Origin: Octopus sinensis
Taxonomy: Eukaryota
Direction of reading: 5' to 3'
DNA length: 64,000 bases
Assembly (NCBI RefSeq): GCF_006345805.1
Contig: NC_042999.1
Coordinates: forward strand, 21,638,001-21,702,000
Shown here: positions 20,776-55,830 of the stretch, piece after piece
How positions within the stretch are numbered: the first letter of the stretch is position 1
How the letters are laid out: every line of letters starts with the position of its first letter
Position numbers and translations under genes: made by a program
Notes under the pieces: model-generated
Database searches by the model: none
The model's input: only the letters and a program-made list of their open reading frames with translations
What the model was told of the DNA's origin: nothing

Positions 20776-22858
20776 CCATTCCTTTGTTATAATTATCTAT
20801 ATAATAGTAAAACATTTTTAATATACATACATACATATATGTGTGTGTGTGTGCGTACGTGTGTGTATGTGTACGTTTGTGCGTGTGAGTATGTGTATTT
20901 ATACATACGCGTTTGAATACTGATGACAATAGATATATGTACCAGTAGATGTGTGGGTGTGTATATATATCTATATATATAAAACTGAGAATGTGTGTAT
21001 GTTTGACTGTCTGTCTCTCTGTGTGTTTCCCTAAACTTGAGAACTAAACAACCAAAAACATTGAAATTTTACACATGCCTTACTTAGGGTCCATGTAGTT
21101 TCATGGCAAAAAATTTTCAACTTCTTGACTAGGGCGAGTCCATATCAATATCATATCTTCTCCACTATTTCAGTATTATGTGTTGAAAGTGAAACAAAAA
21201 CATTTCTCTATTTTATGTCAGATACTTTCACTTTAATACTACAAATTAGAGATAATAATAACAATTGAATTATATGTAGTAAGTAATATTTAAAATCAAA
21301 CTAAAGTATAATATAATCGTAACATGACAAAAGTAAAAATAGCAATTGCTATAAAATTGCATCACTGACTTGAACTTGAATACGTGGTTTCACATGAATG
21401 GGAATAAATTAAAAATAAAATTAGCATGCAGAAATGGAATAGTCCAGATGGACTATTATACATAAATAACTATAGCTTCAACTGCGTACTGCTTTTTGTT
21501 GTCATTATTATTACTGTTTGACTATTGTTATCACGTTTGTTGGTTCCGCGTAAGGGAAACGTTGTTGTGTTGCATTTGTTAGATAATTGTAAACTGTAAC
21601 CCTCCACATTTGGGAGAAGGTGCTTTGGTTATTGTTGAAAAATTGAATTGTGTCCGTGTTTGGGGAAATTGATAATATTTTCCCCGTTTACACGGAAGCA
21701 TTTTTGTTAGAATGCCTTCGATAGAAGAAAGTCCAAAAATGAATTTCGCTTCAGCCGTTGGCGGACTCAAAGACATTAAAATTAAAATGGAAGAAATACA
21801 AATCTATTTCGGATTGATCACCGACAAAGACGTTGAATCTAGAATAACACCACCAAACGAAATAAAAAATTAAATTAAAGAAAAGACTATTGTCTATAGT
21901 AGTATACAATGTAGAGAAGAAAAAAAGGTTTGAACACCTAGAGGAAAGCACCATCGAAAAGTATCTTGGTGCGACTATAAAAGATATCTAACCAGAGGCG
22001 GTTAATTCGCCACAATAGAAGCAAGGTTCGAGTCAACGTAGCGTGCAAGGGAGTACTCAACTCGAAACTTGCAAAAGGGAAATATTTTATTTTCACCTTT
22101 ATATCTGGGACGTAGGAAGCTCCGGATAAAAATTTAAAATGCCCCTCCCACACACATACTTAAAATCAATAGTAAATATTATGTAAACCCTTAACCTGTG
22201 TGCTGCAGAAATCTCGTTTCCAAGATTTTGAATATTTGGTTTCATTGAGTTTGTCGGAGTTATACAATTTATACTTAAGGAAATTCCTAAATAACACATT
22301 CTTTATTCGGGCATTGTCTGTAGTATTAGATTGTGAGTTAGTTATTAGACTATATAGAAGATATTGGCAATTTTAGTTTTGAGTTTTGTATCAGGGATAT
22401 AAAATAGAGCTTGGTGGTTATATGAAGCATGAGTGTTAAATATCTTCTTATTGGCATATAAGATTGAAATTCTAATAGAAATGGCCGTTACCATGCTATC
22501 GAGGGATAATCAAGGACGATTAGAGAGAATATGTAAGAACTGAAGAGTTTGGTTCGGTTTCCTATATGGATAGTGAAGATTAATATTAAGATTAAGTATG
22601 ATATCCATTTATTATCCATTTATTATCCTTTTCAAATACAATATTTAAATTATAATTTTTAAAGAATTTTATCAAAAATAATAATAATAACACCATCGAA
22701 AAATACGTAGGAATGAGAACCCACAAGACACCTGGAGAACGCCGAAGCGTATATCAGCCGACAGTTGTGTAAACAAGAAACAAGATATCCGTCGAATGTA
22801 AATAATGTAAATAAATACATAAATCCTCATCTCTTAAATATAGAAAAGTTTCACTTAC

Positions 22859-23150
22859 CGAAAAAATATATATGGAACCATTATCAACCAGTAACTGTAT
22901 AATACAAAACAATTGTGATACTGTTGCCAGTTTATTGTTGTATAACACTCGGTGACTGAGTGGTAATATTTTTCTCGATATAGGAAGTAAAATATCAACA
23001 AGGACCTTTATCAATTAGTATTAATTATTACATAATAAGAAGTTAAAAATTAAAAGCATTTGTACCATCCCACTAATTAAATGTGCAAGTAATTACTAAT
23101 ATGAGAGAGGTTTTATTTAGTCTGAAATCCTCCACAATTTGACCTGCATT
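22859..23150 (-). promoter_or_regulatory. Predicted non-coding exon 1 / promoter block of TLR paralog 1
   Basis: About 300 bp conserved with 45865-46158 and 55533-55830; ends in minus-strand CG|GTAAGTG donor (GT at 22858-22857); contains AGGAAGT, TTATCA and TGACCT motifs. Confidence 0.6.
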
Positions 23151-23324
23151 GCAGCTTTTAGTGTAATTGCCTTCAACTGCATAAGAGTAATAGCCCAATC
23201 AAATACCAAAAACCGATTACATATTGGGTGAAGGAAGTTGTATGTAAAAACATGGAAAATATAATAGCATCTGCTCATTATTAAGGGGTCGGCTTTGCAT
23301 TCGTTCCTTGCGTGATCGATAAAA

Positions 23325-24420
23325 TAAGAATCGTGTGAGTATTGGTGTCTACGTTATGAGTTCAAATTCCGCTTAGGTCGACTTTGCCTTTCATCCTTTC
23401 GGGCTCGATTAAATAAGTACCAGTTACACACTGGTTTGTCTGTCCTTCTTTGTCCCCTCTGTATTTAGGCCCTTGTGGGTAGTAAGGAAATAGGTATTTC
23501 GTCTACTGTTACGTTCTGAGTCCAAATTCCGCCGAAGTCGACTTTGCCTTTCATCCTTTCGGGGTCGATTAAATAAGTACCAGTTACGCACTGGGATCGA
23601 TGTAATCGACTTAATGCGTTTCTCTGTCCTTGTTTGTCCCCTCTGTGTTTAGCCCCTTATGGGTAGTAATAAAATTGGTGTCTATGTAATCGCTGTACAC
23701 TTTGCTCTGAAATTTCAGGCCTTATACAAATATTTGTAACAAATATTAGTATTACCTTCATCAACATCGTCAAACGTTATTTCTTTCCAGGTTCTATAAT
23801 TAGGCAAACATCGACTTATAACCGTTTCATACGTACTTGAGTTTAAAGGGCGGCAAGCTGACAGGATCGTTAGCACGCTTAGTGGTATTTCTGAATTCAA
23901 ATTCCACCGAGGTCGATTTGCCTTTCATCCTTTCGGGGTCGATAAATTAAGTACCAGTAACGCATTGGGTTCGATGTAATCGACTTAATCCCTTTCTCTG
24001 TCCTTGTTTGTTCCCTCTATGCCTAGCCCCTTGTGGTCAATGAAGAAATAAGAAACGTTAAGAACGCTGGGGGAAATGCTTAGCGGTATTTCACTGTCTT
24101 TACGTCCTGAGTTTAAATTCCACCGAGATCGATTTTGCCTTTCATCCTTTCGGGGTCGATAAATTAAGTACCAGTTAAGCACGGGAGTCGATGTAATCGA
24201 CTTAATCCCTTTGTCCTTGTTTAGCCCCTTGTGGGCAATAAAGAAATAAGAATTATTTGCACACCTGGTAAAATGCTTAACGGCATTTCGTCTTCATGTT
24301 CTGAGTTCAAATTCCCGCGAGATCGAAATTGCCTTTCATTTTTACAGAATCGATAAAGTATATACCAGTTGAATAGTGGGATCTATGTGATTGACATACC
24401 CACTCCTCCGAAACTGCTGG
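23325..24420 (+). mobile_element. Head-to-tail array of SINE family A units
   Basis: Several 170-190 bp repeats of the family A body. Confidence 0.8.
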
Positions 24421-25112
24421 CCTGGTGCCAAAATTTGAATTCATTATTACTGGCAAATCTGCTCAGATATTATCATTTTCATCACAGGTACCGATTGGAT
24501 ATTCTGAATATGGACATTGACAGATATCATCGGCACATCTAGATCGTATGTACTGCTAGAGTTGACGTAGCCAACTCCCACGTCACTGCTAATTTATAGC
24601 CTTGTATCAATAGAGAGATGATTATAGTTATTACTGTTTAGTGAGCAAGAAATGCATGCTTTCAAAGTGACGCTGGTGTATGAATATACGAAGCTAATAT
24701 CCCATCATTACAACCCATCTGGTAATGGTACGCCTGGCATATGCATCACAACCATATGATCGCGACATACTGATCTCTTATGAACACTAACAAGGCATGA
24801 CCTTGCCAGTGGGGCAAGGAATTTTTTTCATGTCATGTAACTCATCCTTATCAAAACGTCCCTGAATAAAGTTTAACGATCATAAACGAAACACCCATGT
24901 TTCCAGAGGTAACTTATTCAAACCCCAATAAATTCCTTTCAACATAGTTACAGTGCTCCCCTGCTACTCCTACTAGTGATCAGAGATGAACATATTGTCA
25001 GCCATTAAGAGACATTCCCAATAATTGTTATTTCTGTTTTTCACAGACTTTCGAATATTCTCTTCATATTTCTCAGTAATTTTGATTTCTATGGTGTCAA
25101 CTTTGTCATCAT

Positions 25113-25291
25113 AGGCGTAGGAGTGTCTGTATGGTAAGTAGCTTGCTAACGAACCGCATGGTTCCTGGTTCAGTCCCAATTCGTGGAACCTTGCGCAAGT
25201 GTCTTCTACAATCGCCTCGGGCCGACCAAAGCCTTGTGAGTGGATTTGGTAGGCGAAGACTGAAAGAAGCCCGTGTATATATGTATGTTAT

Positions 25292-25322
<31 letters not shown>

Positions 25323-25357
25323 TATATATTATATATGTATGTATGTGTATATATATG

Positions 25358-25432
<75 letters not shown>

Positions 25433-25650
25433 GTATAAATGTTTGCGTGTCTGTGTTTGTCCACCCAACATCGCTTGACAACCGATGCTGGTGTGTTTAC
25501 GTCCCCGTAATTTAGCGGTTCGGCGAAAAAGAATGATAGAATAAGTACTAGGGTTACAAAGAAAAAAGTCCTGGGGTTGATTTGATCTACTAAAAGTGGT
25601 GCACCAGCATGGCCAGTCAAATTATTGAAACAACTAAAAGAGTAAAGAGA
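25113..25650 (+). mobile_element. SINE family B
   Basis: As above. Confidence 0.85.

Positions 25651-26763: not shown

Positions 26764-26765
<2 letters not shown>
26229..26765 (-). repeat. About 500-bp interspersed repeat with (AAT)n tail (also 24640-25012, 33445-33830, 59080-59975, short pieces at 28895 and 35778)
   Basis: Multi-copy CATGCCATCAAAGTG...GGTCCCTGAATAAGGG...GAGCAGAATATTTGCTG; probably a retroposon 3' end. Confidence 0.6.
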
Positions 26766-26841
<76 letters not shown>

Positions 26842-26969
26842 ATAGTTATAATTTTATAGTGTGATTCCACTTCACCACCGAGCGCAGTTCTGTTTGCCTT
26901 GGGTATGTGCTGCGGGTTGTTGTGATGCTCTTATGGACTCAGTGAAGTCTATTCACTGATTATCAAAAT

Positions 26970-30177: not shown

Positions 30178-32241
30178 CTAAATCTCGTTGTCGATATCAT
30201 TTGCGTTCAGCCGTCCTATAAAACGTTCCCAAAACATTCCTTCATATTGAGTTTCATTCGGCCATTCAAGGTACGTTTTCTGTTTCAGTAAAATTCCAAG
30301 CCGATTAGTCTGTAAATTCGACGGAATTTCATTTAACAAAACAGGAATGATAATATCGTAGTGCTCTTCTAAGATCTTTTGCTGGGCAATACTTGCTTCA
30401 AACTGGCACCAGCTACTCTGAGCAAAATCATTTGACAACACTAAAACAACCTTACGGCTTTGTTGCATGCTTTCTACGATATTATCAACAATATCGTTTC
30501 CAACCAAAAAGTCCCTGTCATGCAAACATAAATTGAAATGGTTTTCTTCTTCTATAATGGGTAAAAGTTTATTCAGAACCCAGTTGACGTCAGTGCTGCA
30601 ATAACATATAAACGCATCGTACTTATATTGGCCATTATTAACGAGCGCTTTGTATTTTCTCTTTCTTACTAATGATTGGTAAATACAGAGGCGAATCGAC
30701 CATCGTTTTATATATGATAATATTGCTGTAAATACAAACATCACTGACAGCACAGCTACAATCACTCCAGCAACGGCGATAGAAGATGGTTTGTTTATAT
30801 TTTCACAGTAATCCCAGCTTAGAGAAAAATTTCGCAAATGAACGTGACCAAGTGAGTTGGGACTGAAGCAACGATAATATTTGTAATTCTTCAATCGCCC
30901 TGCATTTCTCCGTGACCAGTCTCGAAACCATAGTGTTTTGCAGTCACAAACGAACGGGTTGTTTAAGAGATTAATCTTCAGTTTCTCGTTGCTGAATAGT
31001 AAATGTGAAAATAATTCTTGATTAACGTAGATAATTTTATTGTGCTCTAAGTCAAGTTTACGCAATACTCTCATAGCTGAGCAATTCGCTTTGTTCCATT
31101 TGCTAACATCTGTGTGAGAAATGGTAAGTTCTCTAAGCTTATTCATATTACAAATCGCATCTGGAACTTTGCTAACCTGCCCATCAGTAATCTGCAGATT
31201 TTCCAGTTTAGTCAGTGGCTTAAGTAAATCGTTGGCGTTTATGTTACTGACATTTCTCAGAATCAAATTTCTTAGCTGTGTGCACGACTTTAATAACGAA
31301 GACGTTTTGCCTTCGTTAACATCAACATGAATGTTAATTAGCTCCACTGACTCCAATAATTTGAGTTTGAAGACGTTTCGCTCAAATCTTAATCTAGTGT
31401 GCTTAAGAGATACTAAACTTACTGCTCGTAGACATTTCAAATTCTGGAAAACATCCGATTTGAATAAAATGATATGACCAACAAAGATACCCAGTGTATG
31501 TAGACGGTCTAATCCTTTGAAAAAATTGCTGTTTAGGTAAGTAAGTCCTGATAAACCTAAAAACAGCTCTTTAAGTTTTGGGTAAAATATAAATCCTGAT
31601 TCGTTTCTAAATTTTGGCAAAGTTGAAATTTCGTTATGATAGAAATCTAGATAAGTCAAATTAGGAAGATATCCCCAGTCGGTAACTGTGGTAATACCGT
31701 CTCTTTGAAGAACAAGTCTATCTAATCGATCTATACCTGTGAAATAGTTGCCATCAAAACGTAACATAGTAGATTTCTCTATGTAAATAATTGAAATGTT
31801 AGTTCCTCTGAGACCATCAAATATATCTTTATTCATATTTTCCAGTTGCATATCAGCTAATATTAATTTTTTTGTAGTCAGTGGTAAACCAAACAGCACA
31901 TTTCGTAATTCTGGAAGGGGCAAATGAACAGTAATAAGTTCAAATTCTTGTATATACTTCAAAGACTTAAATACATCATTAGTAGATGTCTTAAGCCAGG
32001 TGGTTTTAATTAACAAATGTTCTAGTAAGGGCAGTTCTGTCAAATTTTGAAAGATTTGGTTGTCCCAATTGTCAATTTTTAGGTCTGTGAATGTTACAGA
32101 TGTAGTGAAATTTGGTAAAGTTGGAACAAAATGGCTACCATCACATAAGTATCTATTTTTTCTGAAAACGTGACATTCTTTCACTTTACTACATGAAACA
32201 TGAAATATCAGGAGGAGTACGCTTAGAGACAAAGACTTCAT
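30178..32241 (-). CDS. Toll-like receptor paralog 2, 687 aa
   Basis: Same architecture, colinear with paralog 1 without indels; TIR differs from paralog 1 at 5 of 147 residues by eye. Confidence 0.97.
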   Translation of the reverse strand: MKSLSLSVLLLIFHVSCSKVKECHVFRKNRYLCDGSHFVPTLPNFTTSVTFTDLKIDNWDNQIFQNLTELPLLEHLLIKTTWLKTSTNDVFKSLKYIQEFELITVHLPLPELRNVLFGLPLTTKKLILADMQLENMNKDIFDGLRGTNISIIYIEKSTMLRFDGNYFTGIDRLDRLVLQRDGITTVTDWGYLPNLTYLDFYHNEISTLPKFRNESGFIFYPKLKELFLGLSGLTYLNSNFFKGLDRLHTLGIFVGHIILFKSDVFQNLKCLRAVSLVSLKHTRLRFERNVFKLKLLESVELINIHVDVNEGKTSSLLKSCTQLRNLILRNVSNINANDLLKPLTKLENLQITDGQVSKVPDAICNMNKLRELTISHTDVSKWNKANCSAMRVLRKLDLEHNKIIYVNQELFSHLLFSNEKLKINLLNNPFVCDCKTLWFRDWSRRNAGRLKNYKYYRCFSPNSLGHVHLRNFSLSWDYCENINKPSSIAVAGVIVAVLSVMFVFTAILSYIKRWSIRLCIYQSLVRKRKYKALVNNGQYKYDAFICYCSTDVNWVLNKLLPIIEEENHFNLCLHDRDFLVGNDIVDNIVESMQQSRKVVLVLSNDFAQSSWCQFEASIAQQKILEEHYDIIIPVLLNEIPSNLQTNRLGILLKQKTYLEWPNETQYEGMFWERFIGRLNANDIDNEI

Positions 32242-32571
32242 TGTGCAGAAATTTAGTTACGAATTTGGATGGGTTCATCTACAAAGCTTCATTCTATTCA
32301 GGTCGTCAGCATTTCATCCATACCTGAAATAGTTCAAAAGAGACACTACATTTAATATTACAAACAAAAGAATTTATATTACAAAATACTAAAACTAAAT
32401 CACATTCGGACAACGTAGCATGAAATAAACATATATTAGTGAATCGTAAAAGGTAAAATATTTAGTATATAATATGTCAAATTTTAAATTCAGCAATATG
32501 CTTCTTGCTCTAGATCTAGAAGGGAAGAAATTATTGTCGATTATTCCAAATCTATTGATAATAAACACCAC

Positions 32572-32671
32572 NNNNNNNNNNNNNNNNNNNNNNNNNNNNN
32601 NNNNNNNNNNNNNNNNNNNNNNNNNNNNNNNNNNNNNNNNNNNNNNNNNNNNNNNNNNNNNNNNNNNNNNN
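32572..32671. other. Assembly gap (100 N, probably a placeholder)
   Basis: Run of exactly 100 N; cuts the paralog 2 upstream flank 330 nt after the ATG. Confidence 0.99.
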
Positions 32672-40220: not shown

Positions 40221-40787
40221 TGTGCAGAAATTTAGTTACGAATTTGGATGGGTTGATCTACAAAGCTTCATTCTATTCAGGTCGTCAGGATTTCCTCCAT
40301 ACCTGAAATAGTTCAAACGAAACACTACACTTAATACAAAAGAATTTATATTACAAATCACTAAAACTAAATCATATTAGGACAATAAAGCATGAAATAA
40401 ACATATATTAATGAATTCTATAAGGGACAATATTTAGTGTATAATATGTCAAATTTTAAATTCAGCAATATGCTTCTTGCTCTAGATCTAGAAGGGAAGA
40501 AATTATTGTCGATTATTCCAAATCTATTGATAATAAACACCACCAATAAGGACACAATGCTAATTTTACGGGAGAGTAAAGACAAGTACATCGACCCTCA
40601 CCTATATATTTCTCGTATTTATTTTTCTGACAATGACTCTTAAAGTTGCCCTTGGGAAGCCATACACCCTTAAACGCAACACGTAAAAACCTCAAAACAT
40701 TTCATTCATGCTCTGACGCTCAGCTTCTTCAGCCATGCATCCCTCTCAACCGAAAAAGAAATGGTAGATTGTAGTCTGAGTTAATTG

Positions 40788-40846
<59 letters not shown>

Positions 40847-41612
40847 GAGTGTGTACAGAGTGGAGGTGAGTGCTCGTGGGTGTAGAGTTATCAGTCACGT
40901 TAGAAGATAGCATATCCGCCTAAATGAGAGTAATTCTTGAAGCTAAGATAGCATTCCATTCTTTATGATATTTATTTTATAATTTATTTCTAGTCTGGCT
41001 TCACAGAAGTCTTTCAGTCAATAGCTATACAGAGCAATTTAAGAGAGAGTTCTCCCTCGAGGATGAAATATGAAAATATACAGTAAAAACAGCAGCTGGT
41101 AAGGGTCAGATGTGCACAGAGGGACCAAAGCATATGGGGCTATTCCCGTTTGAAATACTGAGGAAACAACACGAAAATGTAAATGACCAACAGCTGTAGA
41201 AACTTCAGTCTCACAATGTCTCAACAATGCTTGACAGTTGGTACTTTTGCGTAATGGACAAGGTTGAAGTGACTAAAGCCCTGGGGATATTTTAATCATT
41301 TTGTTTAATAAGAGTAATGATAAAGAACATAAAGAAATACGAAGACGAGTTAAATTTGACTGCCACATATATTCCGCTGCTGAAAGGAAACACGGTAAAC
41401 ATGAATATTTCCGTTAATGAAAACACACAAGCCCTCGTGCAGCTGGAAGATGTCCGCGGGAAGAACACAAATCAAGACGACGAGGATCTCTCTTCACATT
41501 TCTATCCTCACAGAGGCAGCATATCAGAATGAAACTGCTCTCATGTCAAAGATCCAAACTCCATCATGTCGACTCTACACTCTGAGGAATTAGCGGGAAA
41601 AGCTTCTCCAAT

Positions 41613-41660
<48 letters not shown>

Positions 41661-41682
41661 TATTAAAATTATAATTTAGGGT

Positions 41683-42030
41683 CTCTAAGAGATAACACTA
41701 CGCAGGAAATAGCAGCCAAACCTTGACTCTAAAACCACACCAAAAGCCTACACAGCACCAAAACAAACGAGTAAAAATTTACTGGATGAGTCTAGATCCC
41801 GGACATCTGACTCCGCATAAGAAACGCCCCGCCTCATCAGTGGAATATACACAAATAGCACATAATAGCATATATTCCACTGATGTGGCTGGGCGTTTCT
41901 AATCAAGAGGTCCGGGATCTGGAGTTTTCCAGTAAATTTTTTTGTTCACTCCTCGTGATGTGTGGGCGTTTGGTGTGGTTTTAGAGTCAGGTTTTGGTTG
42001 CTATTTCCAGCGTGGTGGTAACATTTAGAT
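41683..42030. repeat. Palindromic element, paralog in unit 3
   Basis: Colinear with 19781-20148. Confidence 0.8.
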
Positions 42031-42369
42031 AGTTAGCAACTTCCTTGTCTTTCTCTCTAAGCTTTTCGTTCGCCTATTTTCCATGCGAGTACTTCTGTTC
42101 TATATGAAAGAGTGAAGCCGCCCAAGTATTGATAGCTTCGGTCTTATTCCGTCCATTTAATTTCGACTCTAGGATCAGTCTCAGTCTGCGCAAATTCTCC
42201 ACCTAAACTTTTTCTGTCATTTCTCTCTCCATCAATTTATACATTTCCAAAATCGTCGACAGAACTTATTCTTTGCCGAACTGCTAAGTTACGGGGACGT
42301 AAAAACACCAGCAACGGTTGTCAAGCCATGTCGGGGGAAAGACACAGACACCTGCATACACAGAGGTAC

Positions 42370-42412
<43 letters not shown>

Positions 42413-42767
42413 CATATATACGACGGAATTCTTTCAGTTTCCGTCTACCAAATCCACTCACAAGGCTTTGGTCGGCCCGAAGCTATAGTAGGAGACGCTT
42501 GCCCAGGGTGCCTTAGTAGTAGGACTGAACCCGGAACCATGTGGTTGGTAAGCAAGCTACTTACCACACAGCCACTCCTACTCCATTCCTTTGTTATAAT
42601 TATCTATATAATCGTAAGATATTTTTAATATACATACATACATATGTGTGGGTGGGTGTGCGCGCGTGCGTGGGGGTGTGTATGTGTATTTATACATACG
42701 CGTTTGAATACTGATGACTATAGATACATATACCTGTACATGTGTGGGTGTGTATATATATATCTCT

Positions 42768-44178
42768 CTATATAAAACTGAGAATTTGTGTCTGTCTGTC
42801 TGTCTGTCTGTCTGTGTGTTTCCCTAAAACCTGAGAACTACAAAACTAATTTCACTCAAATTTTACACATGCCTTACTAAGGGTCCGGGGAATGTCATCG
42901 ACAAAAATGTTCAATTTCTTGACTAGGGCGAGCCCTTAGCAATATCATATCTTCTCCACAATTTCAGTATTACGTGTTAAAAGTGAAACGAAAACATTTC
43001 TCTAATTTATGTCAGATACTTTCACTTTAATAATAAAAATAATAATAACAATTGAATTATATGTAGTAATTAATAATTAAAATAAAACTAAAGTATGATA
43101 TAATCGTAACATAATAAAAGTAAAAATAGCAATTGCTATAAAATTGCATCACTACCTTGAACTTGAATAAGTGGTTTCACATGAATGGGAATAATTTAAA
43201 AATAAAATTAGCGTGCAGAAATAGAATAGTCCAGATAGACTATTATACATAAAGGACTATAGCTTCAACTGCATACTGCTTTTTGTTGTTATTATTATTA
43301 CTGTTTAACTATTGTTATCACGGGTGTTGGTTCCTCGTAAGGGAAACGTTGTTGTGTTGCATTTGTTAAATAATTGTAAACCGTAACCCTCCCCCTTTGG
43401 GAGAAGGAGCTTTGGTTATTGTTTAAAAAGTGAATTATGTCCCTGTTTGTGGAAATTGACAATATTTTCACCGTTTACACGGAAGCATTTTTGTTAGAAT
43501 GCCTTCGATATAAGAAAGTCCAAAAATGAATTTCGCTGCAGCCGTCGGCGGGTGCGAACTCATTAAAATTAAAATGGAAGAAATACAAACCTATTTCGGA
43601 TTGATCACCGACAAAGACGGTGAATCTAGGATAACACCACCAAACGAAATAAAAAAAAATAGACTATTGTCTATAGTAGTATACAATGTAGAGAAGAAAA
43701 AAAGATTTGAACATCTGGAGGAAAGCACCATCGAAAAGTGTCTTGGTGCGACTATGAAAAATATCTAACCAGAGGCGGTAAATTCGGTACAATAGAAGCA
43801 AGGTTCGAGTCAACGGAGCGTGCAAAGGGGAAATATTTTATATTCACCTTTATATCTGGGACGTAGGAAGCCCCGGATACAAATTTAAAATGTCCCCCCC
43901 CCGAAGTAGAGGTAGGCTGTATTGTAGCCACACTTCTATGCAAGAGGGATGACAAGATACAATTGATCGAGATTACCATAGACGAGCCTACAATTCCAGT
44001 CTGTCATATATTTTGAGTATTGTTGTCACTTGCGATATCAAGATATAACTTTAAATTTTCTATATTATGTGTAGATGTATATATATATATATATATATAT
44101 ATAGATGTACATGTAATATGTACACATATACACATGCACTAGCAATATAAACCGGCAACGACGGGTCATACTGCCAGT
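42768..44178 (+). mobile_element. Possible non-autonomous Helitron/HINE-like element (partial paralog 20958-22150)
   Basis: 5' TC-TATATAAAA plus (GTCT)n tract; 3' CCGGCAACGACGGG...CCAGT resembles a hairpin + CTAG end. Confidence 0.35.
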
Positions 44179-44199
44179 ATATATATATATATATATATC

Positions 44200-45100
44200 T
44201 ATAGGGAGAATTCATAATAAAACACAAAATACGAAGACTGTGGTGTAGACAACAAACAGATGTATTAGTTTAACGCTCGGGAAGTGGAAAAGTCTTTAAC
44301 GTTAAAGAATTTTTCACTTTTTGCGCAGAAAGGAACACAGAAAGAAACAAGGAGAGAAAATGAAGAATGTGTAGTGGCAAGCGTTCTATCATGGCGAATG
44401 CCGGACAGAGGGGTCACACAGGAGATCTAGGAAGAAGGGGTGATAATAAAGTAGTGGTGATCCCAAAACGAATGTCTGTGTGTGAGTGTATGAGGGAACA
44501 TGTATGTTCGTGTGGAAGAAGTTTGGTGACCTTGAAGTGTGCGTGTGTGTAGGCGTAGGTGTGTAGATATGGAGCCGGGATGTTGTCCATGCTAGTGTGC
44601 GCGTGGTGGTGTGATGTGGTGCTGTTTGGTATGGTAGTGTATGGTGTAGAAGTGTGCGGTGTGGTGTGATGGAGTTTGGATGTGCAGGAGGCGATAGTGG
44701 GGAAAGCAATGGTGGGGTGTGGTTTAGGCTGCGTCTGGGGATAGGGTTGGGGTTTGTGGGTAGGCTGCGGGTGGGGTAGAGTTGGAGTATGTGTGCAGGC
44801 TGAGTTTGGGGCTAAAGGTGGGATTTTGTGTGGGTGGGTGTAAGGGATGGGATGAGGTTGGGATGGATAGCAAGAATTGTGAGACGTATATTTAGAAAAT
44901 ATGGTAGATTATAAGCAAGCAATTATTCTCCGAGATGAAGGTGAGGTGGGGTGCGAGTATACATCTTAGGTGGAATACATAATTTGCATACAAGCGTAAT
45001 TGTATTATACGGAGGTGCTTCTGCTATTATTGACTAAGACAATGTGTATTGTATATACTTTAACTTAAGTTCGTGTATGCATGCGGCTAGCGTTGTTGTG
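44200..45100 (-). mobile_element. Penelope-like pLTR fragment, family 2, ribozyme core destroyed
   Basis: Homologous to 10948-11510; absent from the paralog 1 unit. Confidence 0.45.
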
Positions 45101-45864
45101 AATATATATTTAAGTTAGTAAAAAAATTCAAAGGAGCCCTATAGCGACTCTTAAAATCAATAGTAAATCTTATGTAAACCCTTAACCTGTGTGCTGCAGA
45201 AATCCCGTTTCCAAGATTTTGAATATTTGGTTTCATTGAGTTTGTCGGAGTTATACAATTTATACTTAAGGAAATTCCTAAATAACACATTCTTTATTCG
45301 GGCATTATCTGTAGTATTAGATTGTTAGTTAGTTATTAGACTATATAGAAGATATTGGCAATTTTAGTTTTGAGTTTTGTATCAGGGATATAAAATAGAG
45401 CTTGGTGGTTATATGAAGCATGGGTGTTAAATATCTTCTCATTGGCATATAAGATTGAAATTCTAATAGAAATGGCCGTTACCATGCTATCGAGGGATAA
45501 TCAAGGACGATTAGAGAGAATATGTAAGAACTGAAGAGTTTGGTTGGGTTTCCTATATGGATAGTGAAGATTAATATTAAGATTAAGTATGATATCCATT
45601 TATTATCCATTTATTATCCTTTTCAAATGCAATATTTAAATTATAATTTTTAAAGAATTTTATCAAAAATAATAATAACACCATCGAAAAATAGGTAGGA
45701 ATGAGAACCCAGGTTCGAAATTTTTCCACAAGACACCTGGAGAACGCTGAAGTGTATATCAGCCGACAGTTGTGTTAACAAGAAACAAGATATCCCTCGA
45801 ATGTAAATATTGTAAAGAATGTACATAATTCCTCATCTCTTAAGCATAGAAAAGTTTCACTTGC

Positions 45865-46158
45865 CGAAAAAATATATATGGAACAATTATCAACCAGCAA
45901 CTGTATAATACACAACAATGGTGATACTGTTACCGGTTTATTGTTGCATAAAACTCGGTGACTGAGTGATAATATTGTTTTCGATACAGGAAGCAAAATA
46001 GCAACAAGGACCATTATCAATTAGTATTAATTATTACATAAAGAGAAGTTAAAAATTGAAAGCATTTGTACCATCCCAGTAATTAAATGTGCAAGTAATT
46101 ACTAATATGAGAGAGGCTTTACTTAGTCTGAAATCCTCCACACTTTGACCTACATTGC
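45865..46158 (-). promoter_or_regulatory. Predicted exon 1 / promoter block of TLR paralog 3 (GC donor)
   Basis: Paralog of 22859-23150; donor reads CG|GCAAGTG (GC at 45864-45863). Confidence 0.55.
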
Positions 46159-47752: not shown

Positions 47753-49816
47753 CTAAGCCTCATTATCGGTTTCATTTTCGTTCAGACGTTTTACAAATTG
47801 TTCCCAAAACTTTTCTTCATATTGGCTTTCATTCGGCCAATTCAAGAACGTTTTATGATTTTGTAAATCAACAAGACTTTCCGTTCGTAAATTCGAAGGA
47901 ATTTCATTTAATAAAACAGGAATAATAATATCGTAGTGCTCTTCTAAGATCTTTTGCTGGGCAATGCTTGCTTCAAACTGGCACCAGCAATTCTGAACAA
48001 AATCCGGTGACAAAATTAAAACAACCTTACGGCTCTGTTGCATGCAGTCCACGACATTATCAATAATATTGCTGCCAACAAAAACGTCCCTGTCATGTAA
48101 ACATAAATTGAAATGGTTTTCTTCTTCTATAATGGGTAAAAGTTTATTCAGAACCCAGTTGACATCAGCATTACAGTAACATACAAGCGCATCATGCGTA
48201 TATTGGCCATCATTAACGAGTGTTTTGTATTTTCTCTTTCTTACTAATGATTGGTATGAACAGAAATGAATTGACCATCGATTTGCATATGATAATATTG
48301 CCAAACATACAAAAATAACAACCAGTACGGCTATAATTCCACCAAACATAGCGATAAGAGACGGTTTCTGTCTATTTTCACAGTAATCCCAGCTTAGAGA
48401 AAAATTTTCCAAATGGATGTAATCAGATGTATCCGGAATAAAGCAACGATATGTCTTGTAATTTTTCAATCTCCCTGCATTTTTCCGTGACCAATCTCGA
48501 AACCAGAGTGTTTTGCAGTCACAAACGAACGGGTTGTTTGAGAGATCAATATTCAGTTTCTCGTTGTTGAATAGTAAATGGGAAAATAATTCTTGATTAA
48601 CGTAACGAATTTTATTATCATTTAACTCCAGTTTACGCAATACTCTCATAACTGAGCAATTCGCTTTGTTCCATTTGCTAACATTTGTGTAAATAATGGA
48701 AAGTCCTGTAAGATTATTCATATTACAAATCGCATCTGGAATTTTGCTAACCTGCCCATCAGTAATCTCCAGATTTTCCAGTTTAGTCAGTGGCTTAAGT
48801 AAATCGTTGGCGTTTATGTTACTGACATTTCTCAGAATCAAATTTCTTAGCTGTGTGCACGACTTTAATAACGAAGACGGTTTGCCTTCGTTAACATCAA
48901 CATGAATGTTAATTAGCTCCACTGATTCCAATAATTTGAGTTTGAAGACGTTCTGCTCAAATCTTAAGACATGGTGCTTAAGAGATACTAAACTTACTGC
49001 TCGTAGATATTTCAATTTCTGGAAAACATCCGATCTGAATAAAACGATATGACCAACAAAGATACCCAGTTTATGTAGACCGTCTAATCCTTTAAAAAAA
49101 TTGCTGTTTAGGTAAGTAAATCCTGATAAACCTATGAATAACTTTTCGAGTTTTGGGTAAAATATAAATCCAGATCCATTTTTAAATTTTGGCAAGGTTG
49201 AAATTTCGTTATGATACAAATCTAGATAAATCAAATTAGGAAGATATCCCCAGTCGGTAACTCTGGTAATACCGTCTCCTTGAAGAACAAGTTGTTCTAA
49301 TCGATCTATACCGGTGAAATAGCTGCCATCAAAACGTACCATATTACATCTACTTATGAAAATACGTGAAACGTTAGTTCCTCTGAGACCATCAAATATA
49401 TCTTTATTCATATTTTCCAGCTGCATTTCAGATAATACTAATTTTATTGTTGTCAGTGGTAAACCAAGCAACACATTTCTTAATTCCAGAAGAGGTAACG
49501 GAACAGTAATAAGTTCAAATTCTTGTATATACTTCAAAGACTTAAATACATCATTGGTAGATGTGTTAAGCCAGGTGGATTTAATTAACAAATGTTCTAG
49601 TAAGGGCAGTTCTGTCAAATTTTGAAAGGTTTGGTTGTCCCAATTGTCAATTTTTAGATCTATGAATGTAACAGCTGTAGTGTCATTTGGAAAATTTGGA
49701 ACAAAAGTGCTTCCTTTGCATGACCAACTCCCTTTTCTGAAAACGTGACATTCTTTCGTTTCACCATATGAAACATGAATTATCAGGAAGAGTACGGTTA
49801 GTGATAAGGGATTCAT
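47753..49816 (-). CDS. Toll-like receptor paralog 4, 687 aa, divergent TM/TIR
   Basis: Same length and architecture; box 1 reads HDALVCY and BB loop HDRDVFVG; 3' flank unrelated to copies 1-3. Confidence 0.96.
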   Translation of the reverse strand: MNPLSLTVLFLIIHVSYGETKECHVFRKGSWSCKGSTFVPNFPNDTTAVTFIDLKIDNWDNQTFQNLTELPLLEHLLIKSTWLNTSTNDVFKSLKYIQEFELITVPLPLLELRNVLLGLPLTTIKLVLSEMQLENMNKDIFDGLRGTNVSRIFISRCNMVRFDGSYFTGIDRLEQLVLQGDGITRVTDWGYLPNLIYLDLYHNEISTLPKFKNGSGFIFYPKLEKLFIGLSGFTYLNSNFFKGLDGLHKLGIFVGHIVLFRSDVFQKLKYLRAVSLVSLKHHVLRFEQNVFKLKLLESVELINIHVDVNEGKPSSLLKSCTQLRNLILRNVSNINANDLLKPLTKLENLEITDGQVSKIPDAICNMNNLTGLSIIYTNVSKWNKANCSVMRVLRKLELNDNKIRYVNQELFSHLLFNNEKLNIDLSNNPFVCDCKTLWFRDWSRKNAGRLKNYKTYRCFIPDTSDYIHLENFSLSWDYCENRQKPSLIAMFGGIIAVLVVIFVCLAILSYANRWSIHFCSYQSLVRKRKYKTLVNDGQYTHDALVCYCNADVNWVLNKLLPIIEEENHFNLCLHDRDVFVGSNIIDNVVDCMQQSRKVVLILSPDFVQNCWCQFEASIAQQKILEEHYDIIIPVLLNEIPSNLRTESLVDLQNHKTFLNWPNESQYEEKFWEQFVKRLNENETDNEA

Positions 49817-51350
49817 TGTGCAGAAATTTAGTTACGACTTTGAATAGGTTGATGTACTAAGCTTCATTTTGTCATATATATTTCAGGTCGTCAGCATTTC
49901 ATCCATATCTGAAACAGTTCAAACGATACACTACACTTGATATTACAAAAGAATTTATATTGCAAAACACTAAAACTAAACCATATTCGGACAATAAAAC
50001 ATGTAATAAACATATATCAGTGAATCATATAAGGGTCAATATTGAGTATATAATATGTTAAATAAGTCAGAAATAAGCTTCTTGCTCTAGATCTAGAATG
50101 GAAGAATGTATAATCTATTTTTCCAAACCTATTGATAATGAAGAATGTTGACAAGTATACAAGGCTCAACAATCTCAATAGAATATAATCAATTACATCG
50201 ATGCACCTACATTTTTCTGGTACTTAGCTTTCAGATACCAGAATGATGACACGTAAAGTAAGTTGACCTTGGGAAGAGATTTACTCTTAAACGAAAGATC
50301 TCCACCCGTAATGAACCCATAAAATTTACTTCAATCTCTGTCTTTTTAGAGTGTTGGATCCCATGATGACGAAAGAGCAATAATTCTTGAAATATGCATA
50401 TACATCTACTTCCTAATTTTCTGCCGTCGTTTATGCTTACATAAACGTTTTCGTATATGACATGACAGAAATGTCAATGCTATTTGTGAATTCTATTGAA
50501 AATCAGCAGAGAAAAGCTTGACACCAAAACAAGGCATCATATTGACACGTCATATTGACATCATATTGACCAAAAAAACTTAGTAGAATTTAATTCTATT
50601 TTACCATGAATGATCAAATTTATGTTGAATCTGAGAGAAAAAAATAATCTCTCCTATTGTTTTAAACGGGAATAATAAGTGTATGTGAATAATAAGTGTA
50701 AAACTAAAAATGTTATATATAGATGTAAAGTTACATCTAAGGGAAGTGTATATTTTTACATCAGTGCGACTTCACTAATTTTGAGAAAGAAACTTGCTAA
50801 TCACTTAAATTCATTTAGAGATAAAAAGAAAATTTCAAAACAAGTCTAACTTAATCAGGTCTTTTAAAGATAGAAGCTAGGACTATACTAACAATTGGCA
50901 ATTAATTAGTACTGCAAAACCGTACATACCAGTATCTCATAAATGTGATCTACGTATAAAAGAAGTTTACCAACTTTTTATATCTAAGTGTTAATATAAT
51001 GAATTCTAGACAAAAGAAAGCTTTAAGATGCTTGCATTAAAGAAAATTTACCGTTGTTAAATATACATGAGTCATAAACATTTAAACAACGAAATTGTTT
51101 GAAATAACTGACTATAAGGATTAAACGAGTGATTATCCAAACAATATTTCTATTGATAATTCGTGTCTAAATAAACGCACAACCCCACTTCATAGAACGC
51201 AAAGAAAATCAACATGAAACTTTAAATATTTAAATCAAAAGATATTAAAGTGAAGACCCTGAAGAGACTGCACCGGAATAAGAGTAAGCTTACAATTGAA
51301 ACGATTACTAATCGATGGATTAGAATCATATGCAGGTCTATTTAAAGCTG

Positions 51351-51417
<67 letters not shown>

Positions 51418-51459
51418 AAGGAATTAAAGGTAATGCTAAAGCTACTTTGTAATAATCAT

Positions 51460-51512
<53 letters not shown>

Positions 51513-51513
51513 G

Positions 51514-51546
<33 letters not shown>

Positions 51547-51604
51547 CTGTGTGTGTGTGTATGTGTGTGTGTGTGTGAGTGTGTCTGATCATTCAATAAG
51601 TGAC

Positions 51605-51795
51605 CGCGTGTGTATCGTTGGCGATTTTTTCCTCCGTCTTTACTTCCTTGGACCTTCCCTTTTTCTATATTTCTGACGAAGAGCTCCGCTCGAAATGTTA
51701 AATCCTCCTTTCCTTTCCCTTACCGTCCAATAACACTATACTTGTTCCACATCCTCGCGTTGTTGTGTTTTCTCTTTGTATTTTCATGTTTGGAT

Positions 51796-51874
<79 letters not shown>

Positions 51875-52990
51875 GGTGTGTATATGTGTATTGCAAATTT
51901 CAAGAGTAAATCAAGTTTATTCTACGGCATCCCCAAAATCCACAAAAGCAGAACAAGTGAGGCATGCAAAGAACTTACAGACATAATCATCAAGGTTCTC
52001 TCACCTGATGACCTGAAATTAAGACCAAAGGTAGCAGGTCCAGCATGCGAAACCCACCGCCTCAGCAACTTCCTAGACACTCTACTGAAACCCTTCCTCA
52101 CACACATCGAAAGCTACATAAGGGATGATCTAAACATGCTCAACCACCTCCCAAAAACGGTCAATGAGAAAACACTGCTAGTATCCTTCAACGTAGTCAA
52201 CCTATATTCAAACATCCTTCACACCCTAGGAATATAAGCAATCACATTCTGGTTAGACAATTACACCTATGAAAAGTCGTAATGGAAGGACTAAGATTTA
52301 TTCTTGACAACAATTATCTTATATTTGATAATGACTACTTCCGACAGCAATGGGAACACGGACTGAACCTTCTTTTGCGAACCTGGTAATGGGCTATCTG
52401 GAAATTAAACTATACCAGAGAACACTCGAGAAATATGAAAACTCCTTTTTAACCTACATTCAAAACAACTGGAAAAGATATCTCGATGGCAGCTTCATCC
52501 TCTAGAATGAAAGTAGAGAGAAACTTAATGACTTCATACCTCTTCTAAATGGAATAAATGAAAACCTCCAATTTATGATAGAGTACAACCAGGAACAACT
52601 AACGTTTTTAGATATCCTTATTAAGAAAGTCGGGAACAAAATAGAGACAGATATCTATTACAAAACCAGGGACTCGAAACAGTACCTGCCATTTGATTCG
52701 TGGCACTCGAGACACACCTGGATGATTATGCCATTCTGTTTAGCCAAAACAATATGCACAATAGTATCAGACACAAACACCCGGGAATTAAAAACTACAC
52801 TCATCAATAGGAATTACCCACAACGTTTAATCGACAATACGATCCAAGGAGTCCTGTAAAATTTTATATCCAACGAGATATGTCAAATTTTATTCTTTTC
52901 TTTCTTTCTCTCACGATACAACATATATGCTTGGGGACTGCCTTGATATATATAGTCGAAGAAACATATTCCCTATGCTCATCTTATTAT
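51605..52990 (+). mobile_element. Penelope-like element: pLTR plus frameshifted RT
   Basis: YGIPKIHK, LRPKVAGP, LSNFLDTLLKP, LVSFNVVNLYSNI, LTFLDILI, DIYYK motifs typical of PLE RT. Confidence 0.85.
51669..51703 (+). ncRNA. Minimal hammerhead motif in the pLTR upstream of a Penelope-like RT
   Basis: AUUU CUGACGA A GAGC ucc GCUC GAA AUGU U AAAU. Confidence 0.65.
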
Positions 52991-53097
52991 TAATAATTCT
53001 TATTCTGCAAGTTTCTTTTGTAGCACTGCAAGGCTATGGATGCGTAACATTGCTAAGCGCGGAGGAGAAACAATGAGAAAACACATTCATATATACA

Positions 53098-53167
<70 letters not shown>

Positions 53168-53541
53168 AACACATTTTATTCAGCAAAAACAATAACAATA
53201 TTCAACAAAAACATTTTGAAATAACGGTCTGACCGTCTGAAAGCAAATGGGAAGCAGTAATTGGAGTAGATGGTGAATATGCTCCGAATAATTATCTAAA
53301 GATGTTTTTGTTACATGTTGTCATAGTTTTTGTTGAATAAAATTTGTTGAAAAAATTATGCACCAACCCAATATATACATATATTTGTGCCTGTGCGTGA
53401 GTGTGTGTGTGTGTGTGTATGATTTTACAAAGACCTATGAATACTTATGCATATAAATACATACATACATAATGCATACATAAATACATACATACATACA
53501 TACTACATACATACATACATACATACATACATACATACATA

Positions 53542-54061
53542 CAATAATCCCTCGCCTATCGCGGTCCACCAATAGCGCACTTGATACATCGCAGTTCACC
53601 TATCGGGCACTCAGTACTTTGCGGGATTTTCTGGCTAATATATGTAAATTTATATCACGGACTCCTCAGCATATCGCCGGTTTATGTAGCCGATAGGTAT
53701 TTATATTTTCTAGATTTTAATTATTTCTGATAAAATAAACATTTTCACACCTAAAAATTAATAAATCAATAACTAAAAATAGAGTACAGTACTGCATTGT
53801 ATAACACATTAATTAAAATATGTTTAAAGAAAATACGTAGTGTACCGCAAATGAGTAAACAAAGAATCGCACATACTCTATGGAAAAGGAAACTCAGGAG
53901 GCAAGTATGTGGTGTTGTTTTGCATTCATAATAAAATAGATATGTACAAATTATAAAATTGATAAAAAATATACAGTATAGTACTGTTTCTACTTCGCGG
54001 ATTTTCCCCTATTGCTGGAGGTTTTTGGAACGTAACAACCGCGATAGTCGCGGGATTACTG
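53542..54061. mobile_element. Tigger/pogo-like MITE, TA target site
   Basis: TIRs CAATAATCCCTCGCCTATCGCGGT / ACCGCGATAGTCGCGGGATTACTG flanked by TA. Confidence 0.7.
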
Positions 54062-54417
54062 TATATGTATATATAGTCAACAGATGAGATCCAGGGACTC
54101 TCGTTATAGAAAATGCTAACTAGCGCTCAGATGATACGTACTCAGACTCTGTTTTTTTTTTATAATTAAGCAATTTCGCCAGGTACGGGGACAACAGGCG
54201 AACAGATGTGGAGGCAATTTTGTAGATGAAGAAATTAAATATAACAATATCTATAGAGATATAAATATCTATGTATCTATACTTATATCGTGTGAAAATC
54301 TCAAGTTGTTGCAGTCTCTGTATACATGACTATACGCACTCACACATACACACATATATATATATGTATGTATGTACGTGTGTATGTGTGTTTATATATG
54401 TATATATATATATATAT

Positions 54418-54496
<79 letters not shown>

Positions 54497-54764
54497 TAAA
54501 TATTTATGTACATATATATATATATATGTATGTGTGTATAAATGAATTATGTATGAATATATATATATATATACACGACAGACGCCTCACACAGTTTCCG
54601 TCATCAGTATTAATTCACACTGAAGACATCGCTCATTTTGGTCTCTACTAGAAGACACACAAACACAAACACAAACACACACACACTCTCTTTCTCTCTC
54701 TCTCTCTCTCTCTCCTCGCTATCTCCTTTCTCTGTCATAGGAACACAACTAGTTCTTTTCTACA

Positions 54765-55335
54765 CTAGGCACAAAGCCCGAAATTTTGGGGGAAGGGGGC
54801 CAGTCGATTAAATCATCCCTAGTACTCCACTGGTACTTAATTTATCGACCCCGAAAGTATGAAAGGCAAATTCGACCTCAGCGGAATTTGAACTCAGAAC
54901 GTAGCGGCAGACGAAATACCTATTTCTTTACTGCCCACAAGGGGCTAAACAGAGAGAGGACAAACAAGGACAGACAAACGTATTAAGTCGATTATATCGA
55001 CCCCAGTGCGTAACTGGTACTTATTTAATCCATCCCAAAAGGATGAAAGGCAAAGTCGACCTCGGCGGAATTTGAACTCAGAACGTAACGGCAGACGAAA
55101 TACCTATTTCTTTACTACCCACAAGGGGCTAAACACAGAGGGGGCAAACATGACATGAACAGACAAACGGATTAAGTCGATTATATCGACTCCAGTACGT
55201 AACTGGTACTTAATTTATCGACCCCGAAAGTATGAAAGGCAAAATCGACCTCGGCGGAATATGAACTCAGAACGTAGCGGCAGACGAAATACCGCAACGT
55301 ATTTCACCCGGCGTGCTAACGTTTCTGCCGGCTCG
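54765..55335 (-). mobile_element. SINE family A tandem array
   Basis: About three internal units. Confidence 0.8.
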
Positions 55336-55532
55336 CCATATACATATAACAACAACAACGATTGTTTGGATCAACGTAAAATGAACTGTTTCGCTCAAAA
55401 TCACATCGCATCGCCCTGTTCAGGAATCGAAACCTCACCTTAACTATCATGCGTGAAACACCTTCACTCCAAGCAAAACACCTTTACAATAGGTACAGCA
55501 CTATAATGCAAAATTATCAAAGTTTCACTTAC

Positions 55533-55830
55533 CGTGTAAATATATATGGAACCATCAATGACTAGTAACTGTATAATACACAACAATGGTGATACTGTTA
55601 CCAATTTATTGCTGCCTCTGCATACCAACTAGCTGACAGTCAGTTTTAAACATGTTTTCGATATAGGAAGCAAAATATCAGCAAGCACCATTATCAATTA
55701 GTATTAATTATTTAAAAAAGCAAAGTTACAAATAAAAGAATTTGTCCCATCCCCACTAATTAAATGTGAAACTAATTGTTGATATGAGAGAATTTTTATT
55801 TAGTCTGAAAGCTCACGTGCTTTGACCTGC
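55533..55830 (-). promoter_or_regulatory. Predicted exon 1 / promoter block of TLR paralog 4
   Basis: Homologous block retained although 50300-55500 is unrelated to the other units; donor CG|GTAAGTG (GT at 55532-55531). Confidence 0.6.

What the first reader, a model, noticed from the sequence alone, without database searches (positions are those of the whole stretch)
22848..55830. Hidden non-coding first exon/promoter conserved 5.6-6.7 kb upstream of three TLRs, one with a GC donor
A block of about 300 bp recurs at 22859-23150, 45865-46158 and 55533-55830. It survives upstream of paralog 4 although the sequence in between is unrelated. Each ends (minus strand) in CG|GTAAGTG, except copy 3, which has CG|GCAAGTG, the recognised minor GC-AG donor. 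All four genes have a TTTCAG acceptor 82-92 nt before the ATG. The block keeps GGAA (ETS-like), GATA and AGGTCA-type motifs, and the donor overlaps an IRF-like AAGTGAAA. Inference: two-exon genes whose regulatory region lies far from the ORF.
Basis: partly seen in the sequence, partly recalled or inferred. Interest (0 to 1): 0.7.

Follow-up and report, generated by a model that had tools for sequence, protein, structure and literature searches.

The report
Octopus TLR genes' upstream leader exon
A roughly 300-bp block lying 5.6-6.7 kb upstream of tandem octopus Toll-like receptor genes is most likely each gene's own promoter plus untranslated first exon, an ordinary gene layout already known for TLRs in other animals.

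Summary
The window is Octopus sinensis chromosome CM016861.1. It holds four intact 687-aa TLR genes (A-D) on the minus strand.

- Blocks lie at 22859-23170, 45865-46158 and 55533-55853.
- Donors are CG|GTAAGTG for A and D, and CG|GCAAGTG for C.
- TTTCAG acceptors lie 82-92 nt before each ATG.

The 100-N gap upstream of gene B is not continuous sequence. The O. vulgaris ortholog shows about 6.6 kb missing there, including a fourth block.

Nine block copies in three octopus species all sit 4-9 kb upstream of a TLR ORF in the same orientation. The most invariant 29 nt straddle the donor. An O. bimaculoides gene model starts its CDS at an ATG 23 nt before that donor and must splice there.

So the two-exon reading is probably right (about 0.7), but no transcript could be examined. 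The block does not clearly evolve more slowly than neutral proxies. Homology "ending at the donor" is caused by a repeat insertion. The unrelated intron sequence reflects repeat turnover.

A non-coding first exon upstream of a single coding exon is standard for TLRs such as human TLR2, so novelty and interest are low.

The parts
22859..23170 (-). Block A: inferred core promoter plus non-coding exon 1 of TLR gene A. The exon ends at 22859 and the donor is G|GTAAGT at 22858-22853. A uATG lies at 22881-22879.
16143..22858 (-). Inferred 5'UTR intron of gene A (6716 nt). About 39% is made of sequence repeated elsewhere in the window. A repeat copy at 22721-22845 begins 14 nt after the donor.
13997..16142 (-). 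Gene A exon 2: 82-nt leader (16061-16142) with conserved uORFs, then the 687-aa TLR ORF (13997-16060).
30178..32323 (-). Gene B exon 2: 82-nt leader after the TTTCAG acceptor, then the 687-aa ORF.
32572..32671 (.). Assembly gap inside gene B's inferred intron. It stands for about 6.6 kb that in O. vulgaris holds B's own block (L008 exon 1 end 3923, exon 2 start 9529).
45865..46158 (-). Block C: inferred promoter plus exon 1 of gene C with the GC donor (CG|GCAAGT). The uATG is lost (ATT). Homology with the other copies ends at 46158.
40303..45864 (-). Inferred 5'UTR intron of gene C (5562 nt), collinear with intron A.
38157..40302 (-). Gene C exon 2: 82-nt leader plus the 687-aa ORF.
55533..55853 (-). 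Block D: inferred promoter plus exon 1 of gene D, with donor CG|GTAAGT.
49909..55532 (-). Inferred 5'UTR intron of gene D (5624 nt). It is unrelated to introns A and C except for its last 390 nt or so, and it contains a 184-nt SINE-like tandem at 54802-55293.
47753..49908 (-). Gene D exon 2: 92-nt leader plus the 687-aa ORF.

Best explanation
Each TLR paralog of this Octopus sinensis tandem array is a two-exon transcription unit. Transcription starts inside the roughly 300-bp block; the exact start is unknown.

Two start sites are possible, both inferred only:
- A TAAATAAAA element (TATAAAA in one O. bimaculoides copy) would give an exon 1 of about 230 nt.
- A TATATCG plus TCAGTC pair would give an exon 1 of about 100 nt.

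The untranslated leader is spliced at CG|GTAAGT (CG|GCAAGT in gene C) across a 5.6-6.7 kb intron rich in repeats. It joins a TTTCAG acceptor 82-92 nt before the ATG, and the whole 687-aa receptor is encoded in exon 2.

The tandem duplication unit runs from just upstream of the block to beyond the ORF, so every copy carries its own promoter and leader. The introns have since diverged by repeat insertion and deletion.

Shown: the sequence anatomy, its presence in nine copies of three species, and an annotated CDS in O. bimaculoides that must use the donor. Inferred: the start site, joining of exon 1 to the TLR exon 2, and use of the GC donor.
For: - Pfam finds LRR and TIR domains in the intact 687-aa ORFs.
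- The window is O. sinensis CM016861.1:21638001-21702000.
- A and C are ends of a collinear segmental duplicate of about 9.7 kb whose upstream limit is the block. A, B and E share the whole intron as well.
- Block copies sit upstream of the O. vulgaris D, C, B and E genes and of both O. bimaculoides genes. All are in the same orientation, with implied introns of 4.2-8.8 kb.
- In the nine-copy alignment, 25 of the 29 columns TCCATATATATTTTTTCGGTAAGTGAAAC are invariant. This is the densest window of the block (shuffle p about 0.002).
- G|GTAAGT is rare, 5 on this strand in 64 kb.
- The acceptor GTTTGAACTATTTCAG is conserved in every copy where the region was read, 10 across three species.
- An in-frame stop 18 nt before each ATG makes the leader non-coding.
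- A gene called in O. bimaculoides has its CDS start at L004:5700, the ATG 23 nt before the donor. An in-frame TAA at 5724 forces splicing at 5722|5723.
- The O. bimaculoides D-like protein carries two RefSeq accessions for one sequence, which fits transcript variants differing in untranslated exons.
- The GC donor is shared by O. sinensis and O. vulgaris gene C, and both genes have intact ORFs.
- Precedent exists in human TLR2, with an untranslated first exon and a single coding exon (PMC3306729), and in the non-coding exons of the TLR10-TLR1-TLR6 cluster (PMC2702086).
Against: - No transcript, junction read or start-site datum was available. Searches for transcript-derived protein fragments and for the spliced junction found nothing, and the control pattern showed the collection holds no octopus DNA.
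- The O. bimaculoides model that uses the donor encodes an 87-aa product and runs more than 34 kb past both TLR genes. It shows use of the donor, not joining to the TLR exon.
- The block is not clearly more conserved than neutral proxies. Orthologous intron segments are as similar as the block, 82-89% against 83%.
- A TATAAAT about 55 nt before the acceptor could serve a proximal promoter.
- A long exon 1 would put 7-10 upstream ATGs in the leader.
- O. bimaculoides loci contain many N runs, so their intron lengths are estimates.
Confidence: 0.7

Rival explanations
1. Proximal promoter. The TLR mRNAs start close to the ATG, for example downstream of the TATAAAT about 55 nt before the 'acceptor'. 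The upstream block is then only a surviving piece of the ancestral duplication unit, possibly a distal enhancer, and is not part of the TLR mRNA.
For: - About 400-480 nt upstream of each ATG are conserved among all four paralogs at the same level as the CDS and contain a TATAAAT.
- The block evolves at about the neutral rate.
- Several upstream ATGs would burden a spliced leader.
Against: - The strongest conservation in the block is exactly on a perfect U1-complementary donor.
- An annotated CDS must splice at that donor.
- The TTTCAG acceptor with its pyrimidine-rich tract is conserved in every copy where the region was read, 10 across three species.
- Nine of nine copies keep position and orientation despite heavy intron turnover.
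Confidence: 0.15
2. The block is the first exon of another long transcript, not of the TLRs. That transcript would be a non-coding RNA or the 87-aa model annotated in O. bimaculoides, which runs through the cluster. Its association with TLR copies is then only because it was co-duplicated with them.
For: The only annotation that demonstrably uses the donor is an 87-aa gene model spanning more than 34 kb across both O. bimaculoides TLR genes.
Against: - No such gene is called in the O. sinensis or O. vulgaris loci.
- Each of five O. vulgaris paralogs has its own block, including a partial view of A's. This fits one leader per receptor gene better than one long transcript.
- The two readings are not mutually exclusive.
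Confidence: 0.1
3. The block is a fragment of an interspersed repeat that happens to lie near the TLR genes.
For: The surrounding sequence is rich in repeats. About 38% of the introns recur within the window, and a true repeat abuts the donor in the A/C lineage.
Against: - In the 64-kb window and about 190 kb of fetched loci from three species, some overlapping each other or the window, every copy lies upstream of a TLR ORF in the same orientation, and none lies elsewhere.
- Real repeat families in the same window have up to about 9 scattered copies in both orientations.
- No Rfam family matches.
Confidence: 0.03

Closest known systems
Human TLR2, and the TLR10-TLR1-TLR6 cluster: untranslated 5' exon(s) followed by a single coding exon
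   Same: The whole receptor ORF lies in the last exon. The first exon is non-coding and is separated from it by an intron of several kb. The promoter therefore lies far from the ATG, and the paralogs are tandem (PMC3306729; PMC2702086).
   Different: This is a cephalopod lineage with no sequence relation to the human leader exons. One leader exon is inferred here rather than mapped, and start sites and splicing have not been shown experimentally.
GC-AG introns, the minor donor class of U2-type introns (established knowledge)
   Same: Gene C has GC at +1/+2 with the rest of the donor at consensus (G|GCAAGT), as is typical of functional GC donors. Its paralogs have GT at the same site. The change is shared by O. 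sinensis and O. vulgaris.
   Different: Exon positions -2 and -3 are not consensus (TCG). Use of the site is unverified. The same copy has also lost its upstream flank and its uATG, so it might instead be a weakened leader.
Tandemly expanded invertebrate TLR families (bivalves, sea urchin)
   Same: The array arose by tandem duplication of single-coding-exon TLR genes, with diversification of the LRR ectodomain (PMC10279657 for mussels; here).
   Different: Cephalopods are reported to have the smallest molluscan TLR repertoires (PMC10279657). This is a small local array of 4-5 genes.

Membership tests
Toll-like receptor | Leucine-rich-repeat ectodomain | tested here: met
   Pfam LRR_8 at E=5e-14 for gene A and 2e-9 for gene D.
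Toll-like receptor | C-terminal TIR domain after a single transmembrane segment | tested here: met
   Pfam TIR at E=3e-20 and 3e-19. A hydrophobic stretch, IAVAGVIVAVLAVMFVFTAILSY, is seen by eye in the translation. No TM predictor was run.
U2-type spliceosomal intron in the 5'UTR | Donor matching GTRAGT (or GC with an otherwise strong consensus) | tested here: met
   G|GTAAGT in 7 copies and G|GCAAGT in 2 copies of the nine-copy alignment. The string is rare in the window.
U2-type spliceosomal intron in the 5'UTR | Acceptor AG preceded by a pyrimidine-rich tract | tested here: met
   TCTCGTTTGAACTATTTCAG| is conserved in every copy where the region was read, 10 across three species.
U2-type spliceosomal intron in the 5'UTR | A spliced transcript joining the two exons | not testable with these tools
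   No octopus transcripts are in any searchable collection. The only indirect evidence is the O. bimaculoides CDS model that must use the donor.
RNA polymerase II core promoter / transcription start | A mapped start site with TATA/Inr at the right spacing | tested here: inconclusive
   Two TATA-like elements lie in the block: 23119-23111, and 22982-22976 with TCAGTC 25 nt downstream. Another lies near the acceptor. Such strings are common in 65% A+T DNA.
Interspersed repeat / transposable element | Many dispersed copies independent of the neighbouring gene, in both orientations | tested here: not met
   Only TLR-linked, co-oriented copies were found in the window and nine fetched loci. A whole-genome copy count could not be done.
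Selectively constrained non-coding element | Substitution rate below neutral proxies | tested here: inconclusive
   The whole block shows 18.8% A-D divergence, against four-fold sites at 13% (all) and 28% (region not homogenised between D and A/B/C, 13/47 sites). Only the 29 nt around the donor stand out.

The most novel reading that the evidence does not exclude
The leader exons and internal splice sites might be used across paralog boundaries. Read-through transcripts from one block would then splice to a downstream paralog's exon, or join the N-terminal LRR part of one gene in frame to the rest of the next, giving combinatorial TLR mRNAs from a tandem array.

Hints:
- RefSeq XP_036356772.1 is exactly gene C codons 1-168 joined by a canonical GT-AG junction to gene B from codon 169.
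- An O. bimaculoides model runs from one block past two TLR genes.

Both could equally be annotation artefacts. Causes could be near-identical paralogs, the unassembled B leader, or a paralog (E) missing from the assembly.
Probability: 0.08. Interest if true: 0.6.

Novelty: new member of a known kind. Interest (0 to 1): 0.22.

Why it matters
If confirmed, it places the promoters of these octopus TLR genes 5.6-6.7 kb from the ORFs in this window (4-9 kb across the three species). That matters for anyone studying their regulation, designing reporter constructs or interpreting ATAC/CAGE data. It also corrects gene models; the O. vulgaris models are truncated to 520-557 aa although the full ORFs are intact.

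It shows too that the O. sinensis assembly gap hides gene B's leader. Biologically this is the expected layout for a TLR gene and opens no new question. The GC donor in one paralog is a small natural experiment on donor strength.

Tried and rejected
- Transcript contigs by exact protein look-up: only genome records were returned.
- N-terminal 211 aa as a query to catch partial ORFs on short transcript contigs: no hits.
- Scan of metagenome contigs for the predicted spliced junction: zero hits. The unspliced donor pattern used as a control also gave zero, so the negative is uninformative.
Its downstream exons lie beyond the fetched loci.
- The 2024 paper on O. sinensis TLRs (PMID 38679344) is not held. 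Open papers on mollusc TLRs say nothing on exon structure.
- Rfam on the whole window: no family.
- Pfam on the four other ORFs of 200 aa or more: nothing; one of them (3927-4547) overlaps a GAA tandem-repeat array.
- Constraint from ortholog comparison: rejected as a test, because alignable O. sinensis-O. bimaculoides intron segments are already 77-89% identical, like the block.
- 'Homology stops at the donor because it is an exon edge': rejected. Ancestral homology continues about 300 nt further, and in the A lineage a repeat starts there.
Full report
**What the window is.** The four 687-aa minus-strand ORFs are A 13997-16060, B 30178-32241, C 38157-40220 and D 47753-49816. They have LRR and TIR domains. 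Exact look-up places them on Octopus sinensis chromosome CM016861.1, so the window is 21638001-21702000. Relatives are annotated 'toll-like receptor 13' in O. sinensis, O. vulgaris and O. bimaculoides.

**The observation.**
- Self-BLAST finds the block three times: A-C 93.7%, A-D 78.9% (E=2e-73) and C-D 79.4%.
- The exon-side ends are 22859, 45865 and 55533. They are followed by GTAAGTGAAAC, GCAAGTGAAAC and GTAAGTGAAAC.
- Exon 2 would start at 16142, 32323, 40302 and 49908, which is 82, 82, 82 and 92 nt before the ATG.
- G|GTAAGT occurs only five times on this strand in 64 kb.

**The gap.** This was tested. The 100 N at 32572-32671 lie 331 nt upstream of B's ATG, in non-coding DNA.
- In the O. 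vulgaris B locus (L008, no N runs), window 34059-32676 matches L008 1302-2657 at 97%.
- Window 32571-30100 matches L008 9281-11752 at 98.6%.
- The gap therefore stands for about 6.6 kb. That stretch holds a block copy 94% identical to block A, with a GT donor (exon end L008:3923) 5.6 kb before B's acceptor.

The two sides of the gap are not continuous, and 'three of four genes' is an assembly artefact.

**Duplication structure.**
- A and C are ends of a collinear duplicate of about 9.7 kb (13472-23152 ~ 37668-46158). It includes the whole intron and stops at the block's upstream edge.
- O. vulgaris B and a fifth paralog E share that intron too.
- D shares only two islands with A and C: the block, and the last 480 nt or so before the ATG plus the ORF.
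- About 38% of each intron recurs elsewhere in the window.

The unrelated sequence between block and gene D is therefore explained by repeat turnover in an intron.

**Comparative evidence.** Nine copies were aligned: O. sinensis A, C, D; O. vulgaris B, C, D, E; and O. bimaculoides A-like and D-like.
- All lie in the same orientation upstream of a TLR ORF, with implied introns of 4.2-8.8 kb. The O. bimaculoides lengths include N runs.
- Of 320 block columns, 153 are invariant.
- The densest 29-column window, 25 invariant, is TCCATATATATTTTTTCGGTAAGTGAAAC. It is centred on the donor (shuffle p about 0.002).
- The GC variant is shared by gene C of O. sinensis and O. vulgaris, and both have intact ORFs.
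- The acceptor is conserved in every copy where the region was read, 10 across three species. An in-frame stop 18 nt before each ATG means an upstream exon cannot add coding sequence.

**Annotation evidence.** In O. bimaculoides a called gene with an 87-aa product has its CDS start at L004:5700.
- That position is the ATG 23 nt before the donor.
- Read on without splicing, the frame hits TAA at 5724, so the model must splice at 5722|5723.
- This shows that an annotated transcript includes the 3' part of the block and uses the predicted donor.
- It does not show joining to the TLR exon, because the model runs more than 34 kb past both TLR genes.
- Its provenance and RNA support are unknown to me.
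- The D-like TLR protein has two RefSeq accessions for one sequence, which fits variants differing in untranslated exons.

**What is not shown.**
- No transcript could be examined.
- The block as a whole is not clearly constrained. A-D divergence is 18.8%, against 16% in the acceptor-side intron, 13% at all four-fold sites and 28% (13/47) at four-fold sites of the region not homogenised between D and A/B/C.
- Orthologous intron pieces are as similar as the block.
- Homology does not end at the donor ancestrally. O. bimaculoides A-like and D-like stay alignable for about 300 nt more. In the O. sinensis A/C lineage a repeat (22721-22845, also at 2019-2141) starts 14 nt after the donor.
- The start site is unknown. 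There are two TATA-like candidates in the block and one near the acceptor, none decisive.
- The ETS, GATA, nuclear-receptor and IRF-like strings exist but are untested.

**Conclusion.** The best reading (about 0.7) is a set of ordinary two-exon TLR genes. Each has a promoter and non-coding leader in the block, a repeat-rich 5'UTR intron, and the entire ORF in exon 2. Each tandem copy carries its own leader.

This is the layout of human TLR2 and of the TLR10-TLR1-TLR6 cluster (PMC3306729, PMC2702086). It is a new member of a known kind and of low general interest. It is useful for correcting gene models and for locating the promoters.

**Rivals.**
- A proximal promoter with the block as a relic or enhancer (0.15).
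- The block as the first exon of another long transcript (0.1, not exclusive).
- An interspersed repeat (0.03).

**Side observations.**
- A RefSeq chimeric isoform joins C and B in frame.
- The LRR-coding region is a patchwork, with non-synonymous change at or above synonymous change.
- O. vulgaris has a fifth paralog that is missing here.
- The exon-2 leader carries conserved uORFs.

Noticed in passing
window 40220-39715 joined to 31736-30178 (minus strand): RefSeq XP_036356772.1 ('TLR13 isoform X3') is a chimera: gene C codons 1-168 plus the first base of codon 169, joined in frame to gene B from the second base of codon 169. The donor is CCG|GTATGG in C and the acceptor is TTCACAG|GT, which only B has. 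It could be real read-through splicing. It could also be an artefact of near-identical paralogs, of B's unassembled leader, or of a missing paralog.
   Followed up: partly
window CDSs 13997-16060, 30178-32241, 38157-40220, 47753-49816; L007:9611-11674: The paralogs are mosaics. Mismatch counts per 90 nt swing between 0-5 and 20-29 along the ORF, and O. vulgaris E is C-like in codons 1-150 and D-like around codons 211-300. In the LRR part, changes at codon positions 1+2 (7.6-11%) equal or exceed four-fold-site changes (3-9%). This points to gene conversion plus diversifying selection of the ectodomain. The TM/TIR part is nearly identical among A, B and C.
   Followed up: partly
window 23100-30300 versus L007 and L008 (O. 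vulgaris): O. vulgaris has a fifth intact paralog (E, 687 aa) with its own block between B and A. In O. sinensis, B's 3' flank runs directly into E's distal 3' flank, which adjoins block A. Either a unit was lost by unequal recombination or the assembly collapsed it.
   Followed up: partly
window 16142-16061 and the same leader in B, C, D: The 82-92-nt exon-2 leader carries conserved upstream ORFs. ATGGATGAAATG...TGA is seen in A, B, D and their O. vulgaris counterparts (the first ATG is altered in C and in both O. bimaculoides genes). An ATGAAGCTT... uORF of 11 codons keeps its start in all copies. The uATG in exon 1 (22881-22879) would give a 10-codon uORF across the junction, and it is lost in gene C.
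   Followed up: partly
L004:5700 onward, L003 entire (O. bimaculoides CM046603.1): A called gene with an 87-aa product starts in the D-like block and spans more than 34 kb over both TLR genes. Its other exons lie beyond the fetched DNA and its nature is unknown.
   Followed up: partly
L005:19638-21707, L007/L008/L009:9611-11674 (O. vulgaris): The deposited O. vulgaris models for four paralogs are truncated to 520 or 557 aa, starting at Met170 or Met131. The full 687-689-aa ORFs from Met1 are nevertheless intact in the DNA.
   Followed up: yes
window 54802-55293; also 1-245, 23349-24429, 59539-59886: A SINE-like unit of about 184 nt (GGCGGAATTTGAACTCAGAACGTAGC...) occurs in tandem and dispersed copies in both orientations. 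A separate repeat of about 400 nt has up to about 9 full or partial copies (2435-2806, 5799-6231, 8051-8477, 10516-10911, 20386-20777, 25111-25646, 42272-42579, 56635-57080, 61129-61553).
   Followed up: no
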